The notes: generated by a model not told the origin, from the sequence alone. A DNA stretch of 64,000 bases from Paraphysomonas bandaiensis (GCA_965644295.1 CBFFRP010000348.1:62001-126000), one strand, 5' to 3'. Positions 42,194 through 64,000 are shown, counted from the stretch's first letter. Numbers and translations: made by a program.

Positions 42194-42652
42194 AATGAAT
42201 AGGCTGTATGTGATATTACTCGCAGTGATGTGGGCCCCTGCACACTCTACATATACATGAGTACATGCATCCACAGCATATGCGGGTCTTCATACTATAT
42301 ATACCCACATCTACAGCAGTGTATACACTCTGTATCTCCATATGTATGTGCTGCTGATGCTGTATGTGGAAAGATATCAATACATTTCTTAAAAAGCAGG
42401 ATTTCTACAACAAAAAACTGTGTTTTTGCTGTATACGTGGTAGAGCGATGGTGTACCGTATATGGTTGGTATGTACAAATATGACGATTGAAAAATTGAA
42501 AAATACGATATTTTGTGCAAAATTTGGAGAATTTTTAGCGTACTAATATTGAAGATCGTACTATGGAGGATATTATTGGACACTGTGACTGGGCGGGTCT
42601 GGCGACTCATTCACTCTCATCTCACAATTCTCATCGCATCACCACAATAAAC

Positions 42653-44224
42653 ATGACCAAGCAACAGTCTGGAGCTATCAACGGTGATGAAGTGGATACT
42701 TATTCCACTCCCCCGCAGAAGACAGCCACTGATATCCTCTTCACTTATGTGAAGTACATCATCTCGTCTGGCCTCACTATGACATACGTCGTTTACATTC
42801 TATGGGGCATATGGACGAATCAAGCAGTGTTGCCGGGACCATCTATTGCCCATTTCTTGATCTTTCTCTTCTGTATGACGTTGGTCGCTTATCTGGAGGG
42901 TCTGCAGGTTGCAATCTTAGCTGTTGAGCACACTGATCCGGAGAAATACCGAGAGTCACACCCTCGTGCGTACGAACTAATTTCTTCCGTCAAAAAGGGA
43001 AACAATGTTGAGCGATTTCTTGTTGGTCGTCAGTTTTTTACTGTTTTCGTCATGACTCTCATGGCTCAAGTGACAAGCTTTCCAGAGATTTCTAAATTGG
43101 GAATTCCGTCTATCATATGGTTCATTTTCATCCAAACCGGTCTTCCTGGTGCGATGGTTGTAACCACTATTGGGTCACTTCAGCCTCAGTTGCTGGCTGC
43201 TAAAGACCCTTGGAAGTTCATGAACCTTTACGGATCGTGCGCTACTCTGTACTTGTGCTACGGCTTGGAAGTGACTGGTATCTGCACACATTTCGCTTGG
43301 ATGCTCATCAACATTCTTCGCAACACTGTTTTTATCACAGATCAGAAACCGAAGAAGCATCAAAAGGAGCTCACTTTGCAGGACTATGTTCTTGAGGGAG
43401 CCAAGTATGTGGTGTCCACCTGTGTGATTTTGACGTATATGACCTACCTAATGTGGGGCATCTGGACTGGGCAGGCCGTATTGCCTGTTCCGCATATCGC
43501 TGTTTTTATCGTTTTCTGCTGCTGTATCCTCTTTCTCGCTCACCTAGAGGGTCTTCAAGTTGCTATTCTGGTTGCAGAGGCTAAGGACCCGGAGCCATAT
43601 GCCCAGACTCACCCTCGAGCCTATTCTCTCATGAAGAGAGCTACTTACGAGAAAAACGTCCGCCGATTCCTAATCGGAAGACAGTTCTTCGTCATATTCG
43701 TAGTGTTTCTGATTAATCAATGTACTATATTTCCCTCTATTTCTAATTTGGGTATTAACAAAGTGGTCTGGTTCGTGTTTGTCCAGTTGGGATTTCCCAC
43801 CGCTCTCAACATTCTCTGCTTCGCACAGCTGCCTGCTCAGTTGTTGGGTAACCAGGATCCTTGGATGTTTATGAACCGTTTCGGCCCTCGCTGTACTCTT
43901 GAGGTGTGCCTGTTCACGGAGATGACTGGACTGGCACACTTCAGTTGGGTGGTGACATCATTTTCTAAGGCCACCTGGTTCCCTATAACTGCTAGTGCAA
44001 TCTCTGAAATCGAGCAGTACAAAGACCTAGAGAGTATTAAATCACCCAACTGTAACTCAGCGGCTGCCACAGATGATGTGACTTCTGCTGCCCCTACTGC
44101 TACTGTTCAAGAGTATGACTCTGTTCCCGAGGCAGATCTCTCCACCGAGGAACTCGACCTAGAGATGCACTCCAACCTCGGCAGGTTTCTCAAGTCATTT
44201 AGAATTCCAACAGGAAAGAACTAG
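42653..44224 (+). CDS. SIT: Silicon transporter (10-TM SIT: two tandem SIT-L units), intronless
   Basis: Two copies each of EGLQ and GRQF, plus HPRAY and (G/A)xLxxQ. About 5 hydrophobic segments per half. An in-frame upstream ATG exists at 42563. Confidence 0.9.
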   Translation: MTKQQSGAINGDEVDTYSTPPQKTATDILFTYVKYIISSGLTMTYVVYILWGIWTNQAVLPGPSIAHFLIFLFCMTLVAYLEGLQVAILAVEHTDPEKYRESHPRAYELISSVKKGNNVERFLVGRQFFTVFVMTLMAQVTSFPEISKLGIPSIIWFIFIQTGLPGAMVVTTIGSLQPQLLAAKDPWKFMNLYGSCATLYLCYGLEVTGICTHFAWMLINILRNTVFITDQKPKKHQKELTLQDYVLEGAKYVVSTCVILTYMTYLMWGIWTGQAVLPVPHIAVFIVFCCCILFLAHLEGLQVAILVAEAKDPEPYAQTHPRAYSLMKRATYEKNVRRFLIGRQFFVIFVVFLINQCTIFPSISNLGINKVVWFVFVQLGFPTALNILCFAQLPAQLLGNQDPWMFMNRFGPRCTLEVCLFTEMTGLAHFSWVVTSFSKATWFPITASAISEIEQYKDLESIKSPNCNSAAATDDVTSAAPTATVQEYDSVPEADLSTEELDLEMHSNLGRFLKSFRIPTGKN

Positions 44225-46262: not shown

Positions 46263-47661
46263 CAATACTTCCCGCAGATAAAGCCGATGTCAGGAAGTAT
46301 GAGTTCACAGGGGCTGCTGTGGCCTTGTTCTGTTCTTCTGACATACATACATATCCATATCCACATACACATACACCTTCAGTGCAGTGTACAGCACTGT
46401 AGGCAAAGCAAAAAGAGGATTTTCAGGAATGTGTATCTCAATATCCTGATATTTAGGGTTGTATTCTTGTTTTATGCAATGTACAGTGTTTGTACAGCAG
46501 ATACACTCCTATGCATCACATGCAGTAGCTGTAACTGTAACACAACTATGGAAAGAGCGATATGTATGGTATATACATTGAAAGGTACAGGAACTTGCTG
46601 GGAGCAACATAATCACACAGAGAGGTCAACTCTGAGAGGAACTAGATGTGTGTGGCTGCGATGATTACGTTTCTATGCTATACTAATGAAACCAGTGGTG
46701 AGAGAGGTGATCTGTAGCTGTAGGTATGCGCATATATACGACATCTTGACAATAGCCACCTGTTTAGAACAGAATTACTGCTCCATTCTGAGCGCGTACT
46801 TAGGTAGATCCGGGTGGGGGCCGAGTGGGGGTCTAACTAATACTTGATTAACTCACATATGTTATTTGCTAGCTACCTACTGAAATCAACTAGCTACATA
46901 ATTATCTCACAGTTTTTAGCGCTGAATAAGCAGTGAGAACCCAGGTGGGGAAGAACTGAACTAAGCAATGTGTACACAGGTAGAGGTGCGCGGTCGCAAC
47001 ACTCAGCAGCATTCACTAGACGGTCAAACGCGGTGATTAGTTACTCTGTCAATATGAGGCAGTTACATGTCATTAGAGTACAATTAAACATAGGGAGAAG
47101 AAATATATCTCTAGTGGTGGTGTTGAGATGCTGCAGAGACTCTTCTTAGTGCTCTGTATCTGGAGCATGGTGCTACCCACTCACCACTGCAACTAAAATG
47201 ACTTCAAACTCGAAATGTTTTCCTCATTGCAGTGTCTGTCTGTGTAGTTGTCGTCAGGAATTTGCCCTGTCGTATATTTCGTATTTCCATGTTGAGATGA
47301 GAGTGTTTTCACTTATCTCTAAGAGTATTCACCTTTGAAGCAATGGCTAAAGGGGGTTGTGTTCCAGTGGTCTGGAGTCCTGTAGAACATATATCTTCTT
47401 GGAATAAATAAACTAACCACCTCAATCAAGTTTTTATTGCAAAGAGAAGATGAGACACAATCGACATACCCCACAAATTACATGAAGCTAAGAAACGACG
47501 TTAAATACTATACAGAGGAAGCAAGTGTAGATATAATTTAGTATAGAGCGTTATATCTCTCACTGGATGACACTTTCTTACTTGACTGCTCTACATGTTA
47601 AGTATCTATATACAACAGTACAACAGAACGCATAGTGCACTTCCCTTCAAAAGACGTTGAA

Positions 47662-47714
47662 CTAACCAAGTACAGGCATATTTACAACACTGGACCGATG
47701 AACTCAACACGAAC
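47662..47714 (+). repeat. 53-bp perfect direct repeat, left copy (duplicate of DIS3L2 3' end)
   Basis: CTAACCAAGTACAGGCATATTTACAACACTGGACCGATGAACTCAACACGAAC, identical to 53754-53806. Confidence 0.95.
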
Positions 47715-48023
47715 CCCACTACATATGCACATACCAAAACACACAAAAACAAGCAACGCATTATATGCTGTATTAGTTATAGGGAAAACAATTCACTTAT
47801 GTTTTTTTACCTTTATGGACACCGAGTCCATTCAAATTGATGATATTATAGTTGCTGATGATGTTTAAGAATGTTGTTCGCATTAGCTATCTGACCTGAC
47901 TGTAACATGGGAACGAACTGCTCATCAATGCTGTTAAATAGCTAGTACTTAGTCTAATTATTAACACTTTCCATTTACTTCTTTCTAAAGCAATAAAGCA
48001 ATAGTAATCAAACCATAAATGGT

Positions 48024-48117
48024 CCATTAATGGCCATAAAAATGGTGGGATTTTTAAAATTAATGGCCATAAAAATGGGGGAAGCAATGCATCGCCATTA
48101 ATGGTTACGCAAGCCTG
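48024..48117 (-). repeat. Transposon-end-like segment: ATTAATGGCCATAAAAATGG x2 plus CAGGCTTGCG terminus (hAT-like)
   Basis: 20-mer at 48026-48045 and 48059-48078. Palindrome CCATTAATGG occurs twice. Reads CAGGCTTGCGTAACC on the minus strand from 48117. No partner end found. Confidence 0.4.
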
Positions 48118-48249
48118 ATTCTGATGACGTATAACAGCACCAAGATTCACAACGCACACACACGCTACCGTCGTCAGGGTCATCCGCTTGGGTTTGATTC
48201 TTCCCCATCGCCACTTTTATATTCCTTTAAAATCTTGAACCATTTCTTA

Positions 48250-49700
48250 CTCCTCATCACTACCTACGACTTCCTTCAAACCCTGCATAGCTCTTCATCA
48301 CTCTCCTCCATATGCATGTCCTCCCAGATTGTATCGTCATCTGTAGTTTTGCTCTCAGTATGCTGTTTCTTCCTGTGTGCAGGACGGAAAATAATACTCT
48401 GCACCCATCCATTCATGTCAAAGTTGAAGCACATCAAATCCTTGTATTAGCGTCCCCGGATTACTACAATATGACTAAGTAGGGCAGACTCTGCACTCAT
48501 GGTGGCTGTATACTTTACGGATCGTGTCTTCTTCTCCTTCTTGACAATCGCGACAGAGAGGACGCTTCTTTTCATTAATTTCTTCATATTCTGTGATAAA
48601 ATTCTGTAAATAAAGTAACCACAAATCGCCAACGATACATACCTTTGCACTGCTTCTGAAACCCTAGCATAATGTTGTGAGTGTCCGAATTGGACTTGTT
48701 CCAGGGCAAAAATCGGTTGTCTTGAGGATTTTCGGATGGTACCCCTAAGACGGCGCCTACTATGGCTACGCTGGATACGAAATTGAAGGCCTCACGGGTG
48801 CCCTCCTGCCTTCGCGCATTGATTGTGGAAGGCTTTGGCTCGATACGAGGGGAAACCATATTCAAATACTTGTATAGGGCTCCTTGGGATCCTTAAGGAA
48901 GTTGCCCTCTCCTGCTTGTTGACAGCCCCTACACTGGTCAGTGTCTTAACAAAACCCCGCCGGACGCAGAAGTGAACGAGTTCCCAGTTGCAGTGGCATC
49001 ATAGCTCACGTCGGACATGATGGCCGCACCGCTTTCGTCCGTCCACGCGGGATGGCCAGTATAGCTACGACCGGGGTCTAACCCTCTTTCTCACTTGTCC
49101 TTGGCTCTAAAAGACAGACACTTCATCATAAATACATATGCTCCGACAGAAAAGAGTTACATGAAGAACACTCCTCGACAGAAATCTGTATAAACGCATA
49201 GATAGACAAAAGTAGCTTCCTGAGGAGCATTCTTCGAGATATATTTTGCTCTCAGCAGTGCAGGTTCACACTGCATAACTGCGCAACCTTGAACCAATTA
49301 AAACCATTATTGAGGTCAACATCAGATCCATAACTGTCTTTCGACTGTGCCTTTGCAAATTTAGCTGCCTGGAGCTTGTCTATGGCGTCTTGTCGGTTCT
49401 CTTCTCGTATGCTTTTGAAGTCATGCAAAGAAGTCACTGAAAGAACACAAATCAGACATTATTCAAAAACAAGTCGTAAGAATTGCACAGCACTCGTATA
49501 TGTGAGAGTCCATCTGTATACAAACCTTTTAAGATCTTCATGATGAAAATTCAATGTAGGGATTTCGAGCAATGGTGCCGGATGTGAGGGGTACTCGACG
49601 AATTGGAACGATATAGGAAACCTTGCGATATTGAAAGAAGCAGTGAATGAAATGAAAATCTGGTTGCATATTCGTGTCCAGTGGTCCATGATTGCCATAG
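48250..49700 (-). pseudogene. Decayed intron-containing gene with PHD-like Cys cluster
   Basis: A 52-nt GT-AG intron (48642-48591) joins QKQCK|EYEEINEKKRPLCRDC...HECRVCPT*SYC. Further open fragments at 49252-49698. In-frame stops present. Confidence 0.4.
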
Positions 49701-50032
49701 AATGATAAGTGTCCAGTGTCGGGTCAGTTCAAGTGTTGCTTGTGTTAATTGTATTTCAATGTCACTGAAATGAGATAAAAATGAGAGTTTAGAACGACAT
49801 TTTTGGACTTTTTATCAAAAAACGATTGTTCGGACTTTTGAATTGTTCGGACTTTTGACGCCGGCTAGCAGTGTTGAGGAAGTGTGTAATCAGAACTTCT
49901 TCTGGTTCATCTCTCTGTGAATTCGATCTTCTTCTCAAGAAGTTGCCGCCTATGATCACGATGGAAGCTTTCATCTCAATCTTCTACCAACCAACAAAGA
50001 ATGTAATTTAATTTTATGTGGTATTGTTAACC

Positions 50033-51988
50033 ATGAGCGCAACCTTCTATACAACTACCGAATTTGCTATTGTACGTGCCGTGAGTTCGGGTCATGCCAA
50101 TACCTCAAATATTCCATCTGAATTAAAGTCCATCGTTCCCGAGTTAATAGATTGTCGCAATAAAGCTCAGAACTCTGTTCGTGGTAGTAACCGCAAAGAT
50201 TTTACGGATGCCTGCTTGAAAGCTTGGGATTTGTTATCAACCTTGAGCTCCCCGTCATTGAGTAATAAATATGCTCTACCATCAAGATATAATTCGGAAA
50301 GTTTTGATCTGTTGTTACAGTCGGCTTCAAAATCACTCTATGCAATGGAAACTGGGGCGCGCTCAGTGGGAAATAATTATATATTAAATGGGCTCAAAGG
50401 AGTAGGAAAAACTTGCATGCTTCACGCGATGGGTGCAATTTCTGCCTGTGTTTGCAAAGATATATTTCCAACTTACTGGATTTATGAAAAGCGAACTCCC
50501 AAGGAACCTGCAAACCCGTACACTCTGATCGAAGCTGCCCGACTTCTTTATAAATTGGAGTTAGACGATTTGCGAAACTCTAGTTTTGAATCAATTGTTT
50601 TGAATTTGATGCCCGACGGAACAGACATGGGAAGCACTGACAGTAGAGAGGTGAGCAAGTTCTTCCTTCTGCTCGATGAGATCACATATTTGTACATCCC
50701 CATTAAGGGACATGAAAGTAGCGAAGAGATTTCTCGTCGAGACACGTGTTGTTTTGTCCTTGGCCAGTTGAGGGAGATTGCACGCAAGGGGGATGTGATT
50801 ATTATGGCAACTGCGTCCAAGGTGAACATTGCGGATTATGTCTTTCACCCCGACTCCGTACATTCAGGTGTATCGATGTATCCTGATTTCAATTGCGGTC
50901 TGTTTACCATATCTCAAATTCGTCCTCCTCGCACCATTGCATTACTTAAGGAGTATTGCTGCGCACGGTATAAAGAAAACTTTACAACGGATTTGGTGAC
51001 CGAGATATTTTATTATACTGGAGGCATTGGGACGTTTGTCGATTGCTATAAGACAGAAGAAAATAAGCGCACAAACTTCGACGGGAGTTGCCTGCTGAGT
51101 GACCCTAAATTATTTCACCTCTCCTGCTCCCTGCTGTCTACTCCAACGATCGGGCTTGCCTCACTAAAAGCGTTCGGGATTGATATGTGCTCACTGAATC
51201 ATTGGGTCGATACCATGATATTTTATTGCGACAATTCCAAAATTGAGTTTCTGACGCCCCAGATTGCAGATATAGTTAAGGAATTCCTCAGTAATAACCA
51301 CATATATGAGCTTATTCATGTCTTCAACCGTACACGGCATGGGTTTCATGGTGGAAGTCCTGGTCACTCGAACGAGGAACTGCTCAACCTCATCGCGCCC
51401 GCGGTGCTGAAGTTGGAAGGGTATATGGAACCTCAACGAGAAATAGCTTTCATCAAATTGGATACGGATGTACGTCTGTACCTGGATGGGAACCACTTCG
51501 GTGAAGATATTTGCGGCTTATGCAACAGACTGCTGCGGTGGAATATAGAAGGCATCGAAATCGGAATAGATCGGATTTGGTTCGAGTTTACTGGTGGTGT
51601 TCTGTACGTCTCTGGTGCACAAATAAAATCCGGAAAAGACAAGCAAATAACCGCAGGCGTTTTGGAGACTCAGCGACGAAAGCCAACTCAGCGAATTGAT
51701 GACACAACTATCGCAGGTATTCTTGTCAAAGCCGAAAGAGGATTTGACGCCCTGTTATCCCATCTTGCCCAGGTATTCCAAGGTCCCATCCAAATCAAGG
51801 AGTTGGTAATACTCACTAATAAAGACGCGCGCGACGGGTTCGAAAAGTTTTGGATTGCAAACGCAGCCACAATGCCTGAAGAACGTTTTGTTACGGCCTC
51901 CGTAAACCATTTTTACTGTACGTTGCATGATGGTATGTCGTGGATAATAGACAACATCACTGTGGAGGTTTCAAGTTTGCTTCTGTAG
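50033..51988 (+). CDS. P-loop NTPase + C-terminal PD-(D/E)xK restriction-endonuclease-fold protein (Crinkler/RHS 'CR' effector-like), intronless
   Basis: Walker A GLKGVGKT (50390-50413), Walker B FFLLLDE and sensor strand IIMATAS. The C-terminus has G..NEE...IGIDRIW...AQIKSG (E-D-QxK nuclease pattern). Confidence 0.75.
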   Translation: MSATFYTTTEFAIVRAVSSGHANTSNIPSELKSIVPELIDCRNKAQNSVRGSNRKDFTDACLKAWDLLSTLSSPSLSNKYALPSRYNSESFDLLLQSASKSLYAMETGARSVGNNYILNGLKGVGKTCMLHAMGAISACVCKDIFPTYWIYEKRTPKEPANPYTLIEAARLLYKLELDDLRNSSFESIVLNLMPDGTDMGSTDSREVSKFFLLLDEITYLYIPIKGHESSEEISRRDTCCFVLGQLREIARKGDVIIMATASKVNIADYVFHPDSVHSGVSMYPDFNCGLFTISQIRPPRTIALLKEYCCARYKENFTTDLVTEIFYYTGGIGTFVDCYKTEENKRTNFDGSCLLSDPKLFHLSCSLLSTPTIGLASLKAFGIDMCSLNHWVDTMIFYCDNSKIEFLTPQIADIVKEFLSNNHIYELIHVFNRTRHGFHGGSPGHSNEELLNLIAPAVLKLEGYMEPQREIAFIKLDTDVRLYLDGNHFGEDICGLCNRLLRWNIEGIEIGIDRIWFEFTGGVLYVSGAQIKSGKDKQITAGVLETQRRKPTQRIDDTTIAGILVKAERGFDALLSHLAQVFQGPIQIKELVILTNKDARDGFEKFWIANAATMPEERFVTASVNHFYCTLHDGMSWIIDNITVEVSSLLL

Positions 51989-52005
51989 GACAAACATTGG
52001 CCCGC

Positions 52006-52299
52006 CGCAGGTATTCTTGTCAAAGCCGAAAGAGGGTTTGACGCCCTGTTATCCCATCTTGCCCAGGTATTCCAAGGTCCCATCCAAATCAAAGAGTTGG
52101 TAATACTCACTAATAAAGACGCGCGCGACGGGTTCGAAAAGTTTTTGGATTGCAAACGCAGCCACAATGCCTGAATAACGTTTTGTTACGGCCTCCGTAA
52201 ACCATTTTTACTGTACGTTGCATGATGGTATGTCGTGGATAATAGACAACATCACTGTAGAGGTTCAAGTTTGCTTCTGTAGGACAAATATTGGCCCGC
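52006..52299 (+). pseudogene. Tandem 294-bp duplicate of the 3' end of the NTPase-REase gene
   Basis: Copies 51712-52005 with a few substitutions, a +1 T (AAAAGTTTTT), a GAA>TAA stop and a -1 T. Confidence 0.92.
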
Positions 52300-53753
52300 C
52301 GTATTCGAGGAGAGCTGGACAAACCGAGACCACCGCCCCAGATGCCTTTGTCAATTGTGTAATGGCGTTATTGCGTCAACATTTACTGAGATTGATTTGA
52401 TTTGCTGACAGAAATTGCATGATATTTAATTGGATTAATTTGAGTACTTGCTTGCGTTGGATTGCAAATCATTGCTTGTGAATTGATAATTTTTAATGGA
52501 TGCATTTTAGAAATTGATTACTACATAAAAATATTGTTAGTAAATATTAAAACATGAAAACGAGAAATTATGCACAACCCTCTCAGCGGGGAGGAAAATT
52601 TCGGTCGAGAATTTACAATAAATTCACAAGGTTGCTGTCGCGATGCAACCGTTTAAGCAAAGAGAATTTGTCCAACAAGCTACTTCAAATACAAAAGAAA
52701 GAACAGTAGGAATGTGAGCCGGAAGCAGTAGTAGAATTCGAATCCTCCGAATCTGAAGAAAACATGAACAACAATAATCTTAATTATGATTCCCCCATAT
52801 ACCGATTACTTTTAGACGAAAACAAAAGCATTTTATGCTCTGACTGCCTGGATAAAGTTTAGTTGTTAGCAGCGAAACCGAAAAATAGACCTGCAATTGA
52901 TTAAATGGAGTGTGTGCAGTGCAATAAGCGCACAACGCCGCCTTACCTACTTACCATTGCTGGTGTAATCAATAACAACGCCGTTTCATCGTCATGTTTT
53001 TTGAAGCGAAATTTGTAGATTTGACAATCAATGCATCAAAGCGTTCCATATCGCTATTCGCTTGGATAAGCATAATTGGGTGTGCTGCCGTTTCAAATGT
53101 GGTTTTGGGATAAAAAACATCACGGAGTTTTAACGTAACGTTTCCGTTGATACTTGGCGTTGGCGTTGGCTTTGTAAATGATTACCGGCCGCTTTAGTAT
53201 TTTTCCGCACAGGATGGCTTCTTCCAGCCCCGCCTTATAATACACGTTATCTGGATTGATAGAAAGGCGACGAATATGTAGTGAAGTGTTCAGAATAATA
53301 TTTATAATTTCTTACTTGAAAGTGCATTGTGTTCAACTGCAAAGTTAAGGTTTACGTGTAGAGCAAAGTTAACTTCAGTGAAATGTCCAATGCTAACACA
53401 ACAGAACGCATACTGACAATAGCTGAAATTGCATTGATGAGAGGAACATTATGTGTCCAAATTTCACAACACATATGTTGTAACAGTGCCAAGTGGAGCA
53501 GCCCCTCATGTTGTAAGTTGTGAGACCTTTCAGTGCAGGAGGTGGATTGACAAACAAAGCGATATACTCTTTATTGCACGGAATATGCGTTATTATAGTG
53601 TAGATATATGATTCAAAGTAAGCTGATAATGTATAATCAAAAAATACTGCATGATATGCACATACTGAAATACACACAGGAAAACTTCGATTAACTGCGC
53701 AGTCATGCTATCAATACAGGACTTCACAATACATAACGCTTTTAAAAATAAAC

Positions 53754-53806
53754 CTAACCAAGTACAGGCATATTTACAACACTGGACCGATGAACTCAAC
53801 ACGAAC
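53754..53806 (+). repeat. 53-bp perfect direct repeat, right copy (last 33 nt of DIS3L2 CDS plus 20 nt 3' flank)
   Basis: Identical to 47662-47714. Includes the codons VRVEFIGPVL* on the minus strand. Confidence 0.95.
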
Positions 53807-56395
53807 AGATATTGGTGGTTTCGTATTTGCAGACAGGCGGATTCTAACCTTGGTTAAAAGTGATATATGAAGGAGAGAGAATTCGTGAATGCAATTATCA
53901 TGGCGTTTGGAAGTACCGCGGTACAACGTAAGGCGCTTATCCTGCTCGTTGTATTGCGCCTCCACATCATCCATCTTGTCTATAAACACCCTTTCCTCGA
54001 ACGAGTATTTACTTACTAACACAGTGAAGCTCTTCTCCCCAATACCTATTACAACTCCTTCCGTTACCTCCGGTCGATGATGAAGGTACACCGCCAAAAA
54101 CACCACATCACTCCTCTGTTGCGCCGCCTTTGCAGCATCCTTGCGAGTATTACAATGCGCCGCAATCTCGACCATATCCTGAAGGCGCTTCTCTTGAACG
54201 TTACCGCTCCTACTCAACTCACAACCTGATAAACCTTCCTCTAGAAGCCGATGCACCATCACGTCAGCATATCGTCGAATGGGAGAGGTAAAATGAGTGT
54301 AGTATGGAATAGAGAGTGCATAATGTCGCCAATTTGGTGCCTCTGTTTCTCCCACAACGAAGTATTGGGCTCGGTTCATTGGGTGCATGATGAGAATCGT
54401 TATAACCTGAATTAGAAGGGGGTCTGCGCGCTCAGATATGCGCTTAAGAGACATCTGTAAGGTGTGCGCAGAGGACGTGTCAATTTCTAGGCCAATGTGC
54501 GACACAAGGTCCACAAGAGTATCTAGTCCTTGCATGTTAGGCGGGGGGTGATGGCGGAGGAATGAATACGGTCCTACTGTTTCCAACAATTTTTCCGCCA
54601 CAAGATAATTAGCTAGTAGCATATACTCTTCAATCAACTGGTTTGATTCTCTAATGATGTACGAAGCAGTTGATATTGGATTGCCGTCACTATCCAATCG
54701 AAACGTGAGTTTCGGCTGATTTAGCACGAGGGCACCATTCCCCATTCGCCTCTGCCTCCTAGGCATAGCCACTCTGTGCAAGAGACACACGTCTCGAGCC
54801 ACCTTCCAGGCTTCCTGAAACTGCCTTCCTTGGCTTACCTTCGGTCGTCGTGAGTGCTCCCATAACTCCTCGGATAAACACTTTATGTGAGAGTCTGGAT
54901 CATCGGAGTCATCACTAGGAACAGAGGGGATAAGTCCTTCCACCATGCGCTGTGCAGTTGGGTAGTCCAACTTCGCACAGGAACGTATTACCGTTCGACC
55001 AAACCAGGGAGTATGGCCAGGTGCTAGGTTCCCATCTCCTGTCATGCGGAATATGACAGAGAACGCTAATCTGTCAGTATCGGGGTTGAGTGAGCAGAGA
55101 TGCTCGCAGAGCAGTGATGGTAGCATAGGAATCACTTTTTGTACAAGATATACGGATGTCGCCCGCTTTTTTGCCTCTGTATCAAGAGCACTTCCAGGAC
55201 GCACGAAGTAACTGACATCTGCGATGTGTACCCCGACCTCGTAAAGTTCTTCTCCTGTGTCCGGGTCAACAGATAAGGGGGTGATATGCAGAGCATCGTC
55301 CAAGTCGCGAGCAGACGGTGGGTCGATCGTAAATATGCGTGTGTCGCGCAGATCGAGACGATTGTCAATCTCCTTCTGTGGAATCTGCCATCCAACACCT
55401 GAAGCAGCTTCTTCCTCGGACATTCCCAACTCAATTCTCAGCTCCTCCAAAACCTCATCCGAGAAAATATCGTGCCTGACTTCATTTTCTATCAGTAGCG
55501 CCTCCGTCTCTGCGGAAATACTCCCAACTTCACCCACCGATCGGACGTTCTCACCAAAAGGTAGCTTCGAAGAGGCTGGCCACTCGCGCACCACGTCAGC
55601 CACAAATATATGTGAAGCCATTTCGCAGGGACGCAGCACGAATGCGTCAGGGAGCTGTCCCCGAGGAATAATCATGTACGGCATACGTGTGTCAGATGGT
55701 GTGAAGGTCACATATCCCTCACTATCTGGTAGTCGTTCGCCGGGCGCAGGAAGGCGACGCAAGGTCAATGCACCAACTATGTTCTTATGATCGTATACCT
55801 CTACTATTCCCACAACCCGCCCACGTGGCTGCAGCCCAGCTTTGTGAGCTGCAATATCCACTGGGTGGCGATTTTTAGCGGGTGGCGGAGCATTCTGACA
55901 GCCCCCTTCCAAAGCCTGACGACGAGAGTCCTGCTTGAATGAAACCAGCAAGTCTTCTCTGGGTCGCCATAGCTCTTGCACTTTCTCCGTACTCTCGATA
56001 TGCATTGCAGAAAATTCCTCTGCAAGCTCACTCCCGCCTTTAATGGTTTCACTCTGGACGGAGCTCTCGTCGTCATCGGCAGCTGTTAATTTCGTAAACG
56101 GCACCCACGAGTCCTCTGGAAGCAACTCAACAACAACAACATCTCCATGATGAGCGCGATTCCTCTCGATCATATCAATCACTACCACATCAATACTAGC
56201 ACCTGGTACATCAATATATGCAACCTTCCTCCGCATCGGGTTTATTTTAACTCTTCCTCTGATGATATGCGAGGGGTCGTCCGCTGCCCTCCTGTCCATC
56301 TCATCAACACTCCAGTGATCAGGATACACTGGATTATTCATTCGAGAGGATTTATTGGGGGTTGATGATTTATTCTTTTGCATATTCGAAGTCAT
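53774..56395 (-). CDS. DIS3L2: DIS3-like 3'-5' exoribonuclease 2 (RNase II/RNB family), intronless
   Basis: ERNRAHHGDVVVVEL, RNB FTIDPPSARDLDDAL, VGVHIADVS, RATSVYL, LCSLNP, IEEYMLLAN and YTHFTSPIRRYAD. No PIN domain. The track ORF extends to 56557 through low-complexity sequence. Confidence 0.93.
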   Translation of the reverse strand: MTSNMQKNKSSTPNKSSRMNNPVYPDHWSVDEMDRRAADDPSHIIRGRVKINPMRRKVAYIDVPGASIDVVVIDMIERNRAHHGDVVVVELLPEDSWVPFTKLTAADDDESSVQSETIKGGSELAEEFSAMHIESTEKVQELWRPREDLLVSFKQDSRRQALEGGCQNAPPPAKNRHPVDIAAHKAGLQPRGRVVGIVEVYDHKNIVGALTLRRLPAPGERLPDSEGYVTFTPSDTRMPYMIIPRGQLPDAFVLRPCEMASHIFVADVVREWPASSKLPFGENVRSVGEVGSISAETEALLIENEVRHDIFSDEVLEELRIELGMSEEEAASGVGWQIPQKEIDNRLDLRDTRIFTIDPPSARDLDDALHITPLSVDPDTGEELYEVGVHIADVSYFVRPGSALDTEAKKRATSVYLVQKVIPMLPSLLCEHLCSLNPDTDRLAFSVIFRMTGDGNLAPGHTPWFGRTVIRSCAKLDYPTAQRMVEGLIPSVPSDDSDDPDSHIKCLSEELWEHSRRPKVSQGRQFQEAWKVARDVCLLHRVAMPRRQRRMGNGALVLNQPKLTFRLDSDGNPISTASYIIRESNQLIEEYMLLANYLVAEKLLETVGPYSFLRHHPPPNMQGLDTLVDLVSHIGLEIDTSSAHTLQMSLKRISERADPLLIQVITILIMHPMNRAQYFVVGETEAPNWRHYALSIPYYTHFTSPIRRYADVMVHRLLEEGLSGCELSRSGNVQEKRLQDMVEIAAHCNTRKDAAKAAQQRSDVVFLAVYLHHRPEVTEGVVIGIGEKSFTVLVSKYSFEERVFIDKMDDVEAQYNEQDKRLTLYRGTSKRHDNCIHEFSLLHISLLTKVRIRLSANTKPPISVRVEFIGPVL

Positions 56396-56804
56396 TCTTA
56401 TGATAGTTATGGATGCAGACTGTGCATGTGAGTAGGCTGCTGTGCTGTGTGCTCCTGCCTCTGCATGGATACATACATACAGCAGCATACAGCATACAGA
56501 TGGACGTACACATACATACCCACAGAACAATCCAAGTACGTTCTGTATTCCAGCCACTGTATTACTACCTCCATTGACACCATGAAGAACGATTGAAGAT
56601 ACACAAAGAAGAGGAGAAATACAGTGTAGTAGTGATGGTATACGTCAACCGCACTACAGTACGCACTTCTGCCACATGATGGAAGTGAGGCATATCGTAC
56701 ATGCACAGAGCTGTATGCTGTATAGGTATGACAACCAGCAGTGTGCATGTGTATACTGCTGTACTCTGTAGGATATCGCCCTGCTGTACGTGATGAGGTC
56801 GTCC

Positions 56805-59138: not shown

Positions 59139-62100
59139 TTACAAAATATCTTCGCGTGTTGATTTGAACAGTGTGTGGCTAATATACATCTTGTCTCTAT
59201 ACCTAGCAGGGGAGCTACTGATTTCCGAACAGCCAAAAACATCGGAATCTACAGCTTGGCGATACGGTTCCGTGTACCACTCCGAGAATGAGGTATAGCC
59301 AGGCAAGCGAGATGAAGCTGATGATCTTTCCCAATAGCTACTCGGGGAGAAGAGTCTTGAAGACACTGGGAAAACGCAGGAGCCTGACTTACTCACTTGT
59401 ACAACATCATGCGACGACGGTATGCAACCATTGCAAGCATTCCTTTCATCTTTATGCAACGGACTGTGCGCCATAACATGAGAAGTGTCTGGTGAATCAC
59501 GTGGTAAGGATGACAGCGAGCGCTTCATGTCATTGACATCCTTTATCACCATTTCCAACTTGATATCCATTTCACGAAGACACGAAGTTGCACTTTGCTC
59601 TGGATTGGTAAAACTATCGCTGAAAGCAGTGTGTGCGGAGTGGCAAGTACCCACTGATTCAGTGGTAGATGCCGCCAACATACTGGTCTTAAAGTAGTTG
59701 ATTTCTGACCCTGATGCGCAGTCACTGTACGTATCAGTAGCTTCTTCAATCTTAGACTTAGGTGATAGCTTACAGTTCCAGTCCACAACAAGGCCCAGCT
59801 TCGCTTCATCAATAGAATAAGAAGATTTTCCTACCTGACATTGCTCATCTGCGTCACTTGAAATATAGGTCCTACTACACCTGGGACCAGGTGACATGGC
59901 TACATCACGAAGTGGTGAGAAGCGCATTGGGCTACCTATGCGACGTACGCTAGTCGATACTCTGTTTTCCTTGTTGTCGTGCAGGCGTTTTTCATTACGA
60001 GCTATTCTTTTCTCCAACTGATTCTGCCACCACCTCAAATACGAATCCTTATCGTCAGAAGAACTAGCAGCACTCTGGCAACTATCGGATGACATCATAG
60101 CGAAATCTGAAGCCATGCTTTCGACAAGGTCCAAGTCAGGGACAGATGTTAATCTGTCAGTCAATGATACTCCATCAGTAACCTGCGACAGTAAACTATC
60201 TTTCGACTGACCAAACTCGCCACCTTGTAATTCTCCAATACCACTCAAAAATCTAACTGGCTGACGGACACTTTTCACAGCAATGTGTGTGAGAAAGCCT
60301 ATCAGAGAAGGCTGACTTTTATCACAAGTATCCTTGCCCTCAATACAGGCGTTGCGAAAAGTATCCGAGAGTAGAACATTGCTAAGATTACAGATCCCAA
60401 TTGTAAAAACACCCCCCAAATGATCTCCTACAAGCCATTCTCTAAAAGGTGGAACATAAACAAAACGAGGCCTTAAACAAGACGACATCTTAAACCAACC
60501 AAATCTGCTCTCTACAACTGGTGACTCGGAAAAAACTGAAGTAGCATAATCTGACTCAGAAACATTCCTACTGCGCCTGCTCGAAGATGGTGAAGATCTA
60601 GATACCTTTGATGACTTCTTACTGCTTCTACTACCATGATCACGGTGATGACGACGTCTTCTCTTGCCATCATCCATCGACAAATTAGATACTAAGCGCT
60701 TCCACATTCCCTTCCCATCTCTACGTCGAACACCGTGCTTCTTCGTTGGCTTAACATCACTGACTGAACTAACTATACTGGACTCAACACTATGTACATC
60801 AGAATCGCTAGCATCGACTTCATCAATGATATTGGCCTCATCACTGGCGCCATCAGCATCTGACTCAGAAACATTCCTACTGCGCCTGCTCGAAGATGGT
60901 GAAGATCTAGATACCTTTGATGACTTCTTACTGCTTCTACTACCATGATCACGGCGATGACGACGTCTTCTCTTGCCATCACCCATCGACAAATTAGATA
61001 CTAAGCGCTTCCACATTCCCTTCCCATCTCTACGTCGAACACCGTGCTTCTTCGTTGGCTTAACATCACTGACTGAACTAACTATACTGGACTCAACACT
61101 ATGTACATCAGAATCGCTAGCATCGACTTCATCAATGATATTGGCCTCATCACTGGCGCCATCAGCATCTGACTCAGAAACATTCCTACTGCGCCTGCTC
61201 GAAGATGGTGAAGATCTAGATACCTTTGATGACTTCTTACTGCTTCTACTACCATGATCACGGTGATGACGACGTCTTCTCTTGCCATCACCCATCGACA
61301 AATTAGATACTAAGCGCTTCCACATTCCCTTCCCATCTTTACGTCGAACACCGTGCTTCTTCGTTGGCTTAACATCACTGACTGAACTAACTATACTGGA
61401 CTCAACACTATGCACATCAGAATCGCTAGCATCGACTTCATCAATGATATTGGCCTCATCACTGGCGTCATCAGCATCTGACTCAGAAACATTCCTACTG
61501 CGCCTGCTCGAAGATGGTGAAGATCTAGATACCTTTGATGACTTCTTACTGCTTCTACTACCATGATCACGGTGATGACGACGTCTTCTCTTGCCATCAT
61601 CCATCGACAAATTAGATACTAAGCGCTTCCACATTCCCTTCCCATCTCTACGTCGAACACCGTGCTTCTTCGTTGGCTTAACATCACTGACTGAACTAAC
61701 TATACTGGACTCAACACTATGTACATCAGAATCGCTAGCATCGACTTCATCAATGATATTGGCCTCATCACTGGCGCCATCAGCATCTGACTCAGAAACA
61801 TTCCTACTGCGCCTGCTCGAAGATGGTGAAGATCTAGATACCTTTGATGACTTCTTACTGCTTCTACTACCATGATCACGGTGATGACGACGTCTTCTCT
61901 TGCCATCATCCATCGACAAATTAGATACTAAGCGCTTCCACATTCCCTTCCCATCTCTACGTCGAACACCGTGCTTCTTCGTTGGCTTAACATCACTGAC
62001 TGAACTAACTATACTGGACTCAACACTATGTACATCACAATCGCTAGCATCGACTTCATCAATGATATTGGCCTCATCACTGGCGTCATCAGCATCTGAC

Positions 62101-64000
62101 TCAGAAACATTCCTACTGCGCCTGCTCGAAGATGGTGAAGATCTAGATACCTTTGATGACTTCTTACTGCTTCTACTACCATGATCACGGTGATGACGAC
62201 GTCTTCTCTTGCCATCACCCATCGACAAATTAGATACTAAGCGCTTCCACATTCCCTTCCCATCTCTACGTCGAACACCGTGCTTCTTCGTTGGCTTAAC
62301 ATCACTGACTGAACTAACTATACTGGACTCAACACTATGTACATCAGAATCGCTAGCATCGACTTCATCAATGATATTGGCCTCATCACTGGCGCCATCA
62401 GCATCTGACTCAGAAACATTCCTACTGCGCCTGCTCGAAGATGGTGAAGATCTAGATACCTTTGATGACTTCTTACTGCTTCTACTACCATGATCACGGC
62501 GATGACGACGTCTTCTCTTGCCATCACCCATCGACAAATTAGATACTAAGCGCTTCCACATTCCCTTCCCATCTCTACGTCGAACACCGTGCTTCTTCGT
62601 TGGCTTAACATCACTGCTGAGACTAACTATACTGGACTCAACACTATGCACATCAGAATCGCTAGCATCGACTTCATCAATGATATTGGCCTCATCACTG
62701 GCGTCATCAGCATCTGACTCAGAAACATTCCTACTGCGCCTGCTCGAAGATGGTGAAGATCTAGATACCTTTGATGACTTCTTACTGCTTCTACTACCAT
62801 GATCACGGTGATGACGACGTCTTCTCTTGCCATCATCCATCGACAAATTAGATACTAAGCGCTTCCACATTCCCTTCCCATCTCTACGTCGAACACCGTG
62901 CTTCTTCGTTGGCTTAACATCACTGACTGAACTAACTATACTGGACTCAACACTATGTACATCACAATCGCTAGCATCGACTTCATCAATGATATTGGCC
63001 TCATCACTGGCGTCATCAGCATCTGACTCAGAAACATTCCTACTGCGCCTGCTCGAAGATGGTGAAGATCTAGATACCTTTGATGACTTCTTACTGCTTC
63101 TACTACCATGATCACGGTGATGACGACGTCTTCTCTTGCCATCACCCATCGACAGATTAGATACTAAGCGCTTCCACATTCCCTTCCCATCTCTACGTCG
63201 AACACCGTGCTTCTTCGTTGGCTTAACATCACTGACTGAACTAACTATACTGGACTCAACACTATGTACATCAGAATCGCTAGCATCGACTTCATCAATG
63301 ATATTGGCCTCATCACTGGCGTCATCAGCATCTGACTCAGAAACATTCCTACTGCGCCTGCTCGAAGATGGTGAAGATCTAGATACCTTTGATGACTTCT
63401 TACTGCTTCTACTACCATGATCACGGTGATGACGACGTCTTCTCTTGCCATCACCCATCGACAAATTAGATACTAAGCGCTTCCACATTCCCTTCCCATC
63501 TCTACGTCGAACACCGTGCTTCTTCGTTGGCTTAACATCACTGACTGAACTAACTATACTGGACTCAACACTATGCACATCAGAATCGCTAGCATCGACT
63601 TCAATGATATTGGCCTCATCACTGGCGTCATCAGCATCTGACTCAGAAACATTCCTACTGCGCCTGCTCGAAGATGGTGAAGATCTAGATACCTTTGATG
63701 ACTTCTTACTGCTTCTACTACCATGATCACGGTGATGACGACGTCTTCTCTTGCCATCATCCATCGACAAATTAGATACTAAGCGCTTCCACATTCCCTT
63801 CCCATCTCTACGTCGAACACCGTGCTTCTTCGTTGGCTTAACATCACTGACTGAACTAACTATACTGGACTCAACACTATGTACATCACAATCGCTAGCA
63901 TCGACTTCATCAATGATATTGGCCTCATCACTGGCGTCATCAGCATCTGACTCAGAAACATTCCTACTGCGCCTGCTCGAAGATGGTGAAGATCTAGATA
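59139..64000 (-). CDS. Large repeat protein (more than 1550 aa, 5' end outside window): 103-aa basic/Ser-rich/acidic tandem repeats plus about 470-aa unique C-terminus
   Basis: Uninterrupted frame across more than 11 repeat units and 1.4 kb of unique sequence. The only indel seen in the array is 3 bp. Confidence 0.7.
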   Translation of the reverse strand, partial: SRSSPSSSRRSRNVSESDADDASDEANIIDEVDASDCDVHSVESSIVSSVSDVKPTKKHGVRRRDGKGMWKRLVSNLSMDDGKRRRRHHRDHGSRSSKKSSKVSRSSPSSSRRSRNVSESDADDASDEANIIEVDASDSDVHSVESSIVSSVSDVKPTKKHGVRRRDGKGMWKRLVSNLSMGDGKRRRRHHRDHGSRSSKKSSKVSRSSPSSSRRSRNVSESDADDASDEANIIDEVDASDSDVHSVESSIVSSVSDVKPTKKHGVRRRDGKGMWKRLVSNLSMGDGKRRRRHHRDHGSRSSKKSSKVSRSSPSSSRRSRNVSESDADDASDEANIIDEVDASDCDVHSVESSIVSSVSDVKPTKKHGVRRRDGKGMWKRLVSNLSMDDGKRRRRHHRDHGSRSSKKSSKVSRSSPSSSRRSRNVSESDADDASDEANIIDEVDASDSDVHSVESSIVSLSSDVKPTKKHGVRRRDGKGMWKRLVSNLSMGDGKRRRRHRRDHGSRSSKKSSKVSRSSPSSSRRSRNVSESDADGASDEANIIDEVDASDSDVHSVESSIVSSVSDVKPTKKHGVRRRDGKGMWKRLVSNLSMGDGKRRRRHHRDHGSRSSKKSSKVSRSSPSSSRRSRNVSESDADDASDEANIIDEVDASDCDVHSVESSIVSSVSDVKPTKKHGVRRRDGKGMWKRLVSNLSMDDGKRRRRHHRDHGSRSSKKSSKVSRSSPSSSRRSRNVSESDADGASDEANIIDEVDASDSDVHSVESSIVSSVSDVKPTKKHGVRRRDGKGMWKRLVSNLSMDDGKRRRRHHRDHGSRSSKKSSKVSRSSPSSSRRSRNVSESDADDASDEANIIDEVDASDSDVHSVESSIVSSVSDVKPTKKHGVRRKDGKGMWKRLVSNLSMGDGKRRRRHHRDHGSRSSKKSSKVSRSSPSSSRRSRNVSESDADGASDEANIIDEVDASDSDVHSVESSIVSSVSDVKPTKKHGVRRRDGKGMWKRLVSNLSMGDGKRRRRHRRDHGSRSSKKSSKVSRSSPSSSRRSRNVSESDADGASDEANIIDEVDASDSDVHSVESSIVSSVSDVKPTKKHGVRRRDGKGMWKRLVSNLSMDDGKRRRRHHRDHGSRSSKKSSKVSRSSPSSSRRSRNVSESDYATSVFSESPVVESRFGWFKMSSCLRPRFVYVPPFREWLVGDHLGGVFTIGICNLSNVLLSDTFRNACIEGKDTCDKSQPSLIGFLTHIAVKSVRQPVRFLSGIGELQGGEFGQSKDSLLSQVTDGVSLTDRLTSVPDLDLVESMASDFAMMSSDSCQSAASSSDDKDSYLRWWQNQLEKRIARNEKRLHDNKENRVSTSVRRIGSPMRFSPLRDVAMSPGPRCSRTYISSDADEQCQVGKSSYSIDEAKLGLVVDWNCKLSPKSKIEEATDTYSDCASGSEINYFKTSMLAASTTESVGTCHSAHTAFSDSFTNPEQSATSCLREMDIKLEMVIKDVNDMKRSLSSLPRDSPDTSHVMAHSPLHKDERNACNGCIPSSHDVVQVSKSGSCVFPVSSRLFSPSSYWERSSASSRLPGYTSFSEWYTEPYRQAVDSDVFGCSEISSSPARYRDKMYISHTLFKSTREDIL
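60551..64000. repeat. 309-bp tandem repeat array (more than 11 near-identical units, one of 306 bp)
   Basis: Shadow ORF starts recur every 309 bp (60664, 60973, 61282 ... 63445). Confidence 0.98.

What the first reader, a model, noticed from the sequence alone, without database searches (positions are those of the whole stretch)
47662..53806. 6-kb island inserted at the DIS3L2 stop codon, bounded by a perfect 53-bp direct repeat
Seen: the last 11 codons of DIS3L2 (including the stop) plus 20 nt of 3' flank (53754-53806) recur with no mismatch 6,092 bp away (47662-47714). Between them lie only accessory sequences: an NTPase-nuclease gene, decayed Zn-finger genes and transposon-end-like repeats. 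Known: this geometry, where the gene 3' end is kept intact and a copy is displaced to the far side, is typical of attL/attR of prokaryotic integrative elements. Long duplications are also made by site-specific REase-type retrotransposons (CRE/SLACS), whereas DNA-transposon TSDs are usually much shorter. Inference: a recent insertion of a mobile unit, possibly mobilised by its own NTPase-REase protein, that leaves the host ORF intact but swaps its 3'UTR. No reverse transcriptase, tyrosine recombinase or intact DDE transposase is visible inside, so the mechanism is unexplained.
Basis: partly seen in the sequence, partly recalled or inferred. Interest (0 to 1): 0.85.

Follow-up and report, generated by a model that had tools for sequence, protein, structure and literature searches.

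The report
Patchwork repair scar beside DIS3L2
The perfect 53-bp repeat is real, but it is the largest of at least five short pieces of the DIS3L2 3' flank re-copied in scrambled order 6 kb away, which looks like error-prone break repair and not like the footprint of a self-mobilising element.

Summary
The 53-mer at 47662-47714 equals 53754-53806 with no mismatch and occurs only twice in the 62.5-Mb genome. The right copy holds the last 10 codons and stop of a genuine DIS3L2 gene plus 20 nt.

The mobile-unit reading is not supported.
- The interior has no recombinase, RT or transposase, and no terminal repeats.
- It has no second copy in the genome.
- The one intact paralogue of the cargo gene shares only its coding sequence, with no flanking repeats.

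The new result is that the 53-mer is not alone. Region 47524-47750 shares five direct exact matches of 12 nt or more with 53308-53806. GC-matched controls gave a mean of 0.043 and a maximum of 1 in 1,337 windows. The pieces are compacted and partly out of order.

My best reading (about 0.6) is templated filler made by template-switching end joining. I could not decide whether a block of about 5.6 kb was captured in the same event at a break about 355 nt 3' of the DIS3L2 stop, or whether an unrelated break 6 kb away was patched.

The block carries an expressed NTPase-HTH-REase gene. Its only close relative (94.7% nt) sits in an otherwise unrelated eukaryote, which looks like horizontal transfer.

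The left junction was never checked with spanning reads. Earlier first-reader notes report other long flanking duplications in this genome; none was verified here.

The parts
47524..47750 (+). Patchwork region: five direct copies of pieces of 53308-53806, separated by 8-38 nt of unmatched sequence. In order these are P1, P2, A, B and C.
   Evidence: Five exact direct matches of 12 nt or more, against a mean of 0.043 and a maximum of 1 in 1,337 GC-matched control windows.
47524..47535 (+). Patch P1, 12/12, equal to 53597-53608.
   Evidence: Not significant on its own; it counts in the cluster test.
47574..47585 (+). Patch P2, 12/12, equal to 53308-53319, which lies inside the LTR fragment.
   Evidence: The 12-mer is also present in 8 of 9 other LTR copies examined, so its template is ambiguous.
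47620..47637 (+). Patch A, 17/18, matching 53398-53415. It is preceded by a native ACAACAG (47612-47618), giving a 7-nt microhomology and an 8-nt tandem TACAACAG.
   Evidence: alignment score 31, above the maximum of 29 in 300 shuffles..
47662..47714 (+). Patch B: the left copy of the 53-mer, which is the derived copy.
47723..47750 (+). Patch C, 26/32 with three small gaps, matching 53654-53685.
   Evidence: p about 0.004-0.006; score 34, above the null maximum of 29.
53754..53806 (-). Right copy of the 53-mer, the native one: the last 10 codons of DIS3L2, the stop codon and 20 nt of 3'UTR.
53399..53753 (-). The 3' flank of DIS3L2, probably native. It holds the templates of patches A, P1 and C. 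The mRNA contig ends at about 53737.
53270..53398 (+). The last 129 bp of a 344-bp LTR (5'-truncated), with its natural ...AACA end. The template of patch A starts at its last base.
   Evidence: In intact copies the family has pairs 3.82 kb apart, the primer-binding site TGGTAGCGAGTGG and 5-bp TSDs.
53774..56557 (-). DIS3L2 gene, 927 aa, intact.
50033..51988 (+). Intronless 651-aa gene. It has a STAND/ORC-Cdc6-like P-loop NTPase, a helical or winged-helix region, and a C-terminal REase-fold domain (D513, Q530-x-K532). It is transcribed, with the mRNA 3' end at about 52408.
51712..52301 (+). Tandem duplication of 294 bp (two units, 97.6% identical) spanning the gene's stop codon. The metatranscriptome contig and the Logan contig of unstated library type carry one unit.
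48118..49866 (+). Right half of a 3.58-kb multicopy element with 711-bp terminal inverted repeats. The left half is missing.
47836..48122 (+). Dispersed repeat of 287 bp (MITE- or SINE-like, at least 17 copies listed at 90-98%) that abuts the broken end of the 3.58-kb element.
46776..47391 (+). Two further dispersed elements of about 285 bp in the left flank (46776-47066 and 47106-47391).

Best explanation
The left 53-mer is templated filler. A double-strand break whose left end lay near 47520-47620 was repaired by an error-prone, microhomology-primed pathway that switches templates, of the polymerase-theta end-joining or MMBIR type. The invading 3' end repeatedly annealed to the 3' flank of DIS3L2 (53308-53806) and copied a short stretch of 12, 12, 18, 53 or about 30 nt. 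It then dissociated and re-annealed elsewhere. This left a compact, partly scrambled mosaic, in the order P1-P2-A-B-C, at 47524-47750. Patch B happened to span the DIS3L2 stop codon.

Shown:
- the patches, their exactness and their direct orientation;
- their clustering against controls;
- that the right-hand copy of B is the native one.

Inferred: the repair pathway.

Two sub-versions remain open.
(a) About 55% of this explanation. The break lay in the DIS3L2 3' flank at about 53398/53399. The two break ends were the left flank and 53399 onwards. A block of about 5.6 kb (about 47751-53398, carrying the NTPase-REase gene) was captured between them. The filler was templated from the opposing break end, and in P2 from the far end of the captured DNA.
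(b) About 45%. The block was already there, and a separate break 5.6-6.2 kb to the left used the DIS3L2 flank as a distant template in cis. That break was perhaps the deletion that removed the left half of the 3.58-kb element.
For: 1. Region 47500-47900 has five direct exact matches of 12 nt or more to 53300-53999. It has none to any other 700-bp bin of 40-59 kb. GC-matched controls gave a mean of 0.043 and a maximum of 1 in 1,337.
2. In 19 kb the only clusters of such matches are this one and the 294-bp tandem duplication.
3. Patches A and C each beat every one of 300 shuffles. C against the island's two ends gives p about 0.005.
4. The order is A-24nt-B-8nt-C on the left and A-238-C-68-B on the right. 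The offsets differ, so this is not a colinear duplicate.
5. Patch A starts at a 7-nt microhomology (ACAACAG) with the sequence just before it, which creates an 8-nt tandem repeat. This is typical of primer-template slippage.
6. B encodes the conserved DIS3L2 C-terminus, so copying ran from right to left.
7. No element features are present: no inverted termini and no recombinase, RT or transposase domain.
8. There is no second copy of 49867-53753, and the paralogue has no flanking repeats.
9. Published polymerase-theta end-joining work describes the same pattern. Fillers arise by iterative microhomology-primed extension. [quoted passage not shown] Filler DNA at foreign-DNA junctions is reviewed in PMC8395108.
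10. For sub-version (a): the template of patch A begins within 1 nt of the natural end of the LTR fragment. The cargo gene is 94.7% identical to a copy in an otherwise unrelated genome.
Against: - Fifty-three nucleotides is long for a single polymerase-theta-type patch, and a filler of about 230 nt is large.
- Only patch A shows clear microhomology at its start. B and C do not.
- P1 and P2 are not individually significant, and P2's 12-mer occurs in most copies of a repeat with about 700 copies.
- For sub-version (b), templates 5.6-6.2 kb away are atypical.
- For sub-version (a), the block contains resident repeats (98% to other genomic copies), and no donor locus or empty site was found.
- Whether this organism has a true Pol theta was not established. 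A family-A polymerase in an open frame of 1,276-1,384 aa exists, but its helicase part was not seen.
- The left junction rests on the assembly plus indirect assembly-graph signatures.
Confidence: 0.6

Rival explanations
1. The pieces are remnants of a long target duplication of at least 500 bp, made when a retroelement or other DNA inserted. The left copy was later broken up by deletions and small rearrangements, leaving islands of identity. The long flanking duplications that other first readers noted in this genome would be the same process.
For: - An LTR fragment lies exactly where patch A's template begins.
- Three patches (P2, A, B) are colinear on both sides.
- Unverified first-reader notes list LINE, Copia and Gypsy insertions in this genome flanked by duplications of 218-1,640 bp, often copying host gene 3' ends.
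Against: - P1 and C are out of order.
- The spacers between patches (8-38 nt) match nothing in the template. Deletions alone cannot give the order A-B-C from A-C-B.
- Identity is all-or-nothing: 53/53 sits next to no similarity, rather than the even decay expected with age.
- Intact copies of this LTR family have ordinary 5-bp TSDs.
- Copies of the 3.58-kb element have no long flanking repeats.
Confidence: 0.13
2. A discrete mobile or integrative unit of 6,039 bp inserted 20 nt after the DIS3L2 stop, making a 53-bp TSD or recombining at a 53-bp att-like core, possibly driven by its own NTPase-REase.
For: - The perfect, unique 53-bp direct repeat has sharp edges.
- The cargo gene shows a patchy, transfer-like distribution.
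- NTPase plus REase modules are linked to mobile elements in prokaryotes, according to PMC5289972.
Against: - It does not explain patches A, C, P1 and P2.
- There are no terminal repeats, no recombinase, RT or transposase, and no other copy of the unit.
- The paralogue and the foreign copies share only the gene.
- A homologue is an ordinary chromosomal gene elsewhere.
- The island is present at flank-like depth in the deepest run: X5, island 88-103 against DIS3L2 76. No empty site was seen.
Confidence: 0.07
3. This is an assembly artefact. The left mosaic or the left 53-mer was created when haplotypes or contigs were stitched across a heterozygous structural variant.
For: - The left junction was not checked with reads.
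- X8's contig crosses the whole right 53-mer without branching, which would fit a single copy in that sample.
- The many long flanking duplications noted elsewhere in this assembly could be false duplications.
Against: - A mosaic of five exact pieces of 12-53 nt in scrambled order is not a known stitching artefact.
- In X5 (depth about 100) a contig stops exactly 30 nt into the 53-mer. In X10 a contig starts at its first base. Both are expected only if the 53-mer has two left contexts in those independent data.
- X8 has only about 4x depth.
Confidence: 0.06

Closest known systems
Templated insertions or 'filler DNA' of polymerase-theta-mediated end joining (TMEJ), as at T-DNA/genome junctions and CRISPR-break scars in plants, worms and mammals (PMC10923293, PMC8395108)
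   Same: - Several short exact copies of nearby sequence lie at one junction.
- All are templated from one small region.
- The order is scrambled.
- Microhomology is present at the start of one patch.
- The templates map to what would be the opposing break end and, possibly, to the far end of the captured DNA.
   Different: - The patch size (53 nt) and the total filler (about 230 nt) are at the upper end of what is described.
- This is a fixed germline event in a diatom-like genome, not an experimental junction.
- The enzyme was not identified here.
- If the block was not captured, the templates lie about 6 kb away, which is unusual.
Replication-based template switching (FoSTeS/MMBIR) complex rearrangements (from my own knowledge)
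   Same: Both involve serial template switches over kilobase distances, junctional microhomology, direct orientation of the copied pieces, and possible insertion of a multi-kb segment.
   Different: MMBIR segments are usually hundreds of bp or longer. No duplicated donor of the 5.6-kb block exists in this genome.
   Same: A perfect direct repeat of about 50 bp brackets several kb, with the host gene's end preserved.
   Different: - There is no recombinase, RT or endonuclease-RT gene.
- There are no defined termini and no other copies.
- Extra out-of-order patches are present, which these mechanisms do not make.
CR (Crinkler-RHS-type) toxin module NTPase + HTH + REase (Zhang et al. 2016, as summarised in PMC5289972), for the cargo gene
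   Same: - The domain order is the same: P-loop NTPase, then a helical or winged-helix region, then a C-terminal REase-fold domain with a D...QxK motif.
- It is eukaryotic and intronless, and belongs to a multi-paralogue family.
- The protein-atlas search lists Crinkler clusters among its neighbours.
   Different: - There is no Crinkler/Ubl header: Pfam PF20147 was not hit.
- No secretion signal was examined.
- The REase assignment rests on weak fold matches (Z 5.7 or less) plus the motif.
- The architecture also resembles prokaryotic STAND-nuclease defence proteins such as Avs3, which appears in the fold matches.

Membership tests
Site-specific integrative element (att sites) | Identical core sequence at both ends | tested here: met
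   53/53 identity, unique pair.
Site-specific integrative element (att sites) | Element-encoded tyrosine or serine recombinase (or equivalent) | tested here: not met
   No Pfam hit in any interior ORF tested. The only long ORF is an NTPase-REase.
Site-specific integrative element (att sites) | Empty site, excised circle or further integrated copies exist | tested here: inconclusive
   No second haplotype in the assembly. The four runs laid all carry the island. 31-mer contigs cannot reveal a heterozygous empty site. No further copy is present in the genome.
Transposable element with target-site duplication | Defined termini (TIR, LTR or poly(A)) directly inside the duplication | tested here: not met
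   No inverted pairs of 20 nt or more. The ends are CCCACTAC... and ...AAAAATAAAC.
Transposable element with target-site duplication | Several copies sharing the same boundaries | tested here: not met
   49867-53753 is single-copy. The paralogue C234 and the foreign copies L040/L041 share only the gene.
Transposable element with target-site duplication | Duplication is a single contiguous stretch of the target | tested here: not met
   At least four more patches with different offsets and a different order.
TMEJ-type templated filler | Inserted stretches map to nearby sequence, often several, in mixed order | tested here: met
   Five direct patches, all from 53308-53806. Controls: mean 0.043, maximum 1 in 1,337.
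TMEJ-type templated filler | Microhomology between primer end and template at patch starts | tested here: inconclusive
   7 nt (ACAACAG) for patch A. None is evident for B or C.
TMEJ-type templated filler | Organism encodes polymerase theta | tested here: inconclusive
   Family-A polymerase hits include one in an open frame of 1,276-1,384 aa on C28. The 500 aa upstream showed only DNA_pol_A.
CR-type NTPase+HTH+REase module | P-loop NTPase with Walker A and Walker B | tested here: met
   GxKGVGKT and hhhDE are invariant in 27 homologues. AAA_22, AAA_16 and ATPase_2 are hit in family members. Foldseek matches ORC/Cdc6, NACHT and CED-4 at E about 1e-6.
CR-type NTPase+HTH+REase module | C-terminal restriction-endonuclease-fold domain with catalytic D...(D/E/Q)xK | tested here: inconclusive
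   D513, Q530 and K532 are conserved. The best fold matches are mostly REase-fold nucleases (AF1548, Avs3 nuclease, MspJI, LlaBIII, Can2), but at Z of 5.7 or less. One family member hits Mrr_cat_2 at E=0.004.
CR-type NTPase+HTH+REase module | N-terminal Crinkler (Ubl) header for delivery | tested here: not met
   No PF20147 or other N-terminal domain hit. Residues 1-100 are modelled as plain helices.

The most novel reading that the evidence does not exclude
The mosaic at 47524-47750 would be the preserved integration scar of a recent eukaryote-to-eukaryote gene transfer. A block of about 5.6 kb carrying an expressed, headless Crinkler-type NTPase-HTH-REase gene was captured at a chromosome break about 355 nt behind DIS3L2 by polymerase-theta-like end joining. 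The gene would be a candidate STAND-nuclease immune or conflict gene. The same gene is 94.7% identical in an otherwise unrelated protist genome. The locus would then show both the cargo and the mechanism of horizontal gene acquisition in a diatom.
Probability: 0.25. Interest if true: 0.7.

Novelty: new member of a known kind. Interest (0 to 1): 0.4.

Why it matters
If the reading holds, the locus is a natural, fixed example of multi-patch templated repair in a diatom-like genome. In the capture version it would also show how foreign or ectopic DNA enters such genomes without any integrase.

It also carries a practical warning. A perfect long direct repeat bracketing 'accessory' DNA is not enough to call an integrative element. 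Looking for further short shared pieces around the repeat changed the reading here.

The near-identity of the NTPase-REase gene to a copy in an unrelated eukaryote gives a concrete candidate for recent transfer of a conflict or immunity-type gene between eukaryotes. The unverified notes of other long flanking duplications in this genome suggest that unusual break repair, or false duplication in the assembly, may be widespread here and is worth one systematic check.

Tried and rejected
Looking for an empty site, a sister-species locus or the left junction:
- Searches of the own genome with both flanks found no second haplotype.
- A scan of JGI metagenome contigs for a 29-nt core of the 53-mer gave 0 hits.
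- Exact look-ups of the two ORFs that span the left junction found nothing on record.
- Protein searches with the DIS3L2 C-terminal piece and the full length gave best hits of only 38-59% identity, so no close relative was available.
- Read laying could cover only 6,000 bases and all four runs were 31-mer contigs.

Testing the mobile-unit idea:
- No shared boundaries or flanking repeats were found at the C234 paralogue.
- No long flanking repeats surround three full copies of the 3.58-kb element.
- Intact LTR copies have 5-bp TSDs.

Looking for a viral or metagenomic vector of the gene:
- The search for related loci found no relatives in viral contigs or JGI metagenomes.

Other checks that led nowhere:
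- Zn-finger genes: no Pfam hit in 19 ORFs.
- Rfam: nothing in 46-55 kb.
- An association between the NTPase family and a MULE-like transposase (C360, L040) was considered and rejected. The transposon at C360 is a separate 2.5-kb insertion next to the paralogue, not around it.
- Reading L040 and L041 as two genomic contexts was rejected. They are two haplotypes of one locus.
Full report
**Setting.**
The window is contig C348:62001-126000 of a 62.5-Mb, 669-contig nuclear genome. A silicon-transporter gene lies at 42563-44224. The best named DIS3L2 relatives are stramenopiles. The host is therefore a diatom-like stramenopile.

**Observation.**
The repeat is exactly as described. 47662-47714 equals 53754-53806, 53/53, direct, 6,092 bp apart. 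Allowing three mismatches, it occurs only at these two places in the genome.

ORF 53774-56557 on the minus strand is a complete DIS3L2, with RNB at E=8e-91 plus OB_Dis3 and Dis3l2_C_term. The coding part of the 53-mer, VRVEFIGPVL*, aligns with the C-termini of orthologues. The right copy is therefore the original and the left copy is derived.

**What lies between the repeats.**
From left to right:
- 121 bp of unique sequence.
- A 287-bp dispersed element at 47836-48122, with at least 17 copies listed at 90-98%.
- The right 1.75 kb of a 3.58-kb element with 711-bp inverted ends, at 48118-49866. Full copies are seen on C79, C232 and C258.
- A single-copy stretch at 49867-53753 that holds a 651-aa gene at 50033-51988.
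- A 294-bp tandem duplication across that gene's stop codon (97.6% identity).
- The last 129 bp of a 344-bp LTR, at 53270-53398. The family is high-copy, with pairs 3.82 kb apart, the primer-binding site TGGTAGCGAGTGG and 5-bp TSDs.

No ORF gave a zinc-finger, recombinase, RT or transposase hit. No Rfam family matched.

**The cargo gene.**
It has no Pfam hit itself. An exhaustive profile search found 138 relatives, with full-length ones at 31-36% identity. Walker A and B motifs and a C-terminal D513...Q530-x-K532 motif are conserved. Family members hit AAA_22, AAA_16 and ATPase_2.

The AlphaFold model has pLDDT 90. Its first 430 residues or so match ORC/Cdc6, NACHT and CED-4. The C-terminal domain modelled alone gives only weak matches (Z 5.7 or less). 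These are mostly REase-fold nucleases: AF1548, the Avs3 nuclease, MspJI, LlaBIII and Can2.

This is the NTPase + HTH + REase order described as the commonest Crinkler C-terminal module (PMC5289972), but without the Crinkler header.

A poly(A) metatranscriptome contig covers 50233-52408, while the 52450-53250 interval has no coverage. A second Logan contig, of unstated library type, also ends at 52408. The gene is therefore expressed.

**Is the island a mobile unit?**
I found no support.
- The genome has one intact paralogue (C234, 56% aa). It shares only coding sequence with the island and has no flanking repeats.
- A 35% homologue sits among housekeeping genes in the same context in all three contigs shown, of 24 read.
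- The island is present in all four runs laid. In the deepest run (X5), island contigs have depth 88-103 and DIS3L2 has 76, so the island is not hemizygous there.

**The key new finding.**
The 53-mer is not the only shared piece. Between 47500-47900 and 53250-53950 there are five direct exact matches of 12 nt or more:

| Patch | Left copy | Right copy | Match |
|---|---|---|---|
| P1 | 47524-47535 | 53597-53608 | 12/12 |
| P2 | 47574-47585 | 53308-53319 | 12/12 |
| A | 47620-47637 | 53398-53415 | 17/18 |
| B | 47662-47714 | 53754-53806 | 53/53 |
| C | 47723-47750 | 53654-53685 | 26/32 |

- GC-matched control windows gave a mean of 0.043 and never more than 1 match (1,337 windows).
- No other 700-bp bin between 40 and 59 kb has any such match to the left region.
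- In that 19 kb the only clusters of such matches are this one and the tandem duplication.
- A and C each beat all 300 shuffles.
- The pieces are compacted and partly out of order. The left order is A-24nt-B-8nt-C and the right order is A-238nt-C-68nt-B.
- The spacers between patches match nothing in the template.
- Patch A is primed by a 7-nt microhomology (ACAACAG), which leaves an 8-nt tandem repeat.

**Interpretation.**
A staggered cut (TSD) or a crossover at a core site (att) yields one contiguous duplicate. Neither yields a scrambled set of exact fragments from one 500-bp template. Even decay of an older duplication would give graded similarity and colinearity, which is not seen.

The pattern does match templated filler made by iterative microhomology-primed synthesis. 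At junctions of captured DNA, such fillers map to the opposing break end or to the far end of the captured molecule (PMC10923293; see also PMC8395108).

Read that way, the flank from 53399 to the stop codon is the native 3' region of DIS3L2. This agrees with a DIS3L2 contig, from a poly(A)-selected metatranscriptome, that crosses 53754 and ends at 53737.

Two versions remain:
- (a) Capture. The break lay at about 53398/9, and about 5.6 kb (about 47751-53398) was captured in the same event.
- (b) In situ. A separate break 6 kb away borrowed this template.

Version (a) is favoured in two ways. The templates would then lie 0-410 nt from the break. Patch A's template also starts at the natural end of the LTR fragment. 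Version (b) needs no donor for a block that contains resident repeats. I put them at roughly 55:45.

**A transfer-like signal.**
An ENA metagenome assembly holds two haplotypes of one locus (L040 and L041; shared neighbouring genes). Each carries a copy of the gene that is 94.7% identical over 49887-51994 only. There are 111 substitutions, spread evenly over codon positions, and the ORFs are broken.

The surrounding 24 kb has no DNA match in this genome. Its PPR-methyltransferase gene finds only a 47% match, and a dynamin-like gene finds none. This looks like recent transfer between distant eukaryotes. The direction is unknown, because the 56% paralogue in this genome is the next nearest relative.

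**Limits.**
- The left junction was not examined with reads.
- The support for a second copy of the 53-mer in other data sets is indirect. An X5 contig ends 30 nt into the repeat, and an X10 contig starts at its first base.
- No close sister genome was reachable.
- Pol theta was not identified.
- First-reader notes list other insertions in this genome flanked by duplications of 218-1,640 bp. I could not locate or test them. They could reflect the same repair biology or false duplication in the assembly.

**Verdict.**
The mobile-element, att or TSD interpretation is not supported. The best reading is a template-switching repair scar, possibly marking the capture of a 5.6-kb gene-bearing block.

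Noticed in passing
window 49887-51994; L040:9860-11964; L041:9860-11970: The NTPase-REase gene plus 146 bp upstream is 94.7% identical (111 substitutions, codon positions 28/22/36) to a copy on two haplotype contigs of ENA assembly ERZ25071330. The other genes on those contigs are only distantly related to this genome: the best is 47% aa, and 24 kb has no DNA match. This looks like recent transfer between eukaryotes. The foreign copies have broken ORFs.
   Followed up: partly
window 51712-52301: A 294-bp tandem duplication (two units, 97.6% identical) spans the NTPase gene's stop codon. A metatranscriptome contig (X11) and a Logan contig of unstated library type (L022, SRR6342624) both carry a single unit and end at 52408. 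Either the duplication is strain-specific or the assemblers collapsed it.
   Followed up: partly
L037:986-4564 (C79); also L038 and L039; window 48118-49866: A 3.58-kb multicopy element with 711-bp terminal inverted repeats (98.7% identical) and no ORF longer than 127 aa. It may be a non-autonomous Mutator-like element. The window holds only its right half.
   Followed up: partly
window 53270-53398; L063-L071: A high-copy LTR retroelement family. The LTR is 344 bp (TG...CA), the primer-binding site is TGGTAGCGAGTGG, LTR pairs are about 3.82 kb apart, and TSDs are 5 bp. The word depth of this stretch is about 700 times that of single-copy DNA in run X5.
   Followed up: partly
L054:4407-6953 (G000:C360): A 606-aa ORF with a weak MULE transposase match (E=0.002) is flanked by 63-nt imperfect inverted repeats. 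At least 20 genomic copies of the family exist. This one sits directly after a distant (25%) paralogue of the NTPase gene, and a truncated relative lies next to the foreign copy in L040.
   Followed up: partly
window 59139-63794 (minus strand) and on to the window's end: A 1,551-aa ORF without a Pfam hit contains 11-12 near-identical 309-bp tandem units (94-100%) and shows a strong GC skew.
   Followed up: no
same genome, other contigs (first-reader notes): Eight unverified first-reader notes describe LINE, Copia, Gypsy or unnamed insertions flanked by direct duplications of 218-1,640 bp, several copying host gene 3' ends. This could be a genome-wide repair or integration peculiarity, or false duplications at heterozygous insertions.
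   Followed up: no
window 47612-47626: An 8-nt tandem repeat, TACAACAG TACAACAG, lies at the start of patch A. It has the form expected from microhomology-primed slippage.
   Followed up: yes
window 47406-47419 versus 53746-53760: A 14/15 match (AAATAAA-CTAACCA) to the right junction itself lies 250 nt left of the left 53-mer. Its score is within the shuffle range, so it may be chance or a sixth patch.
   Followed up: partly
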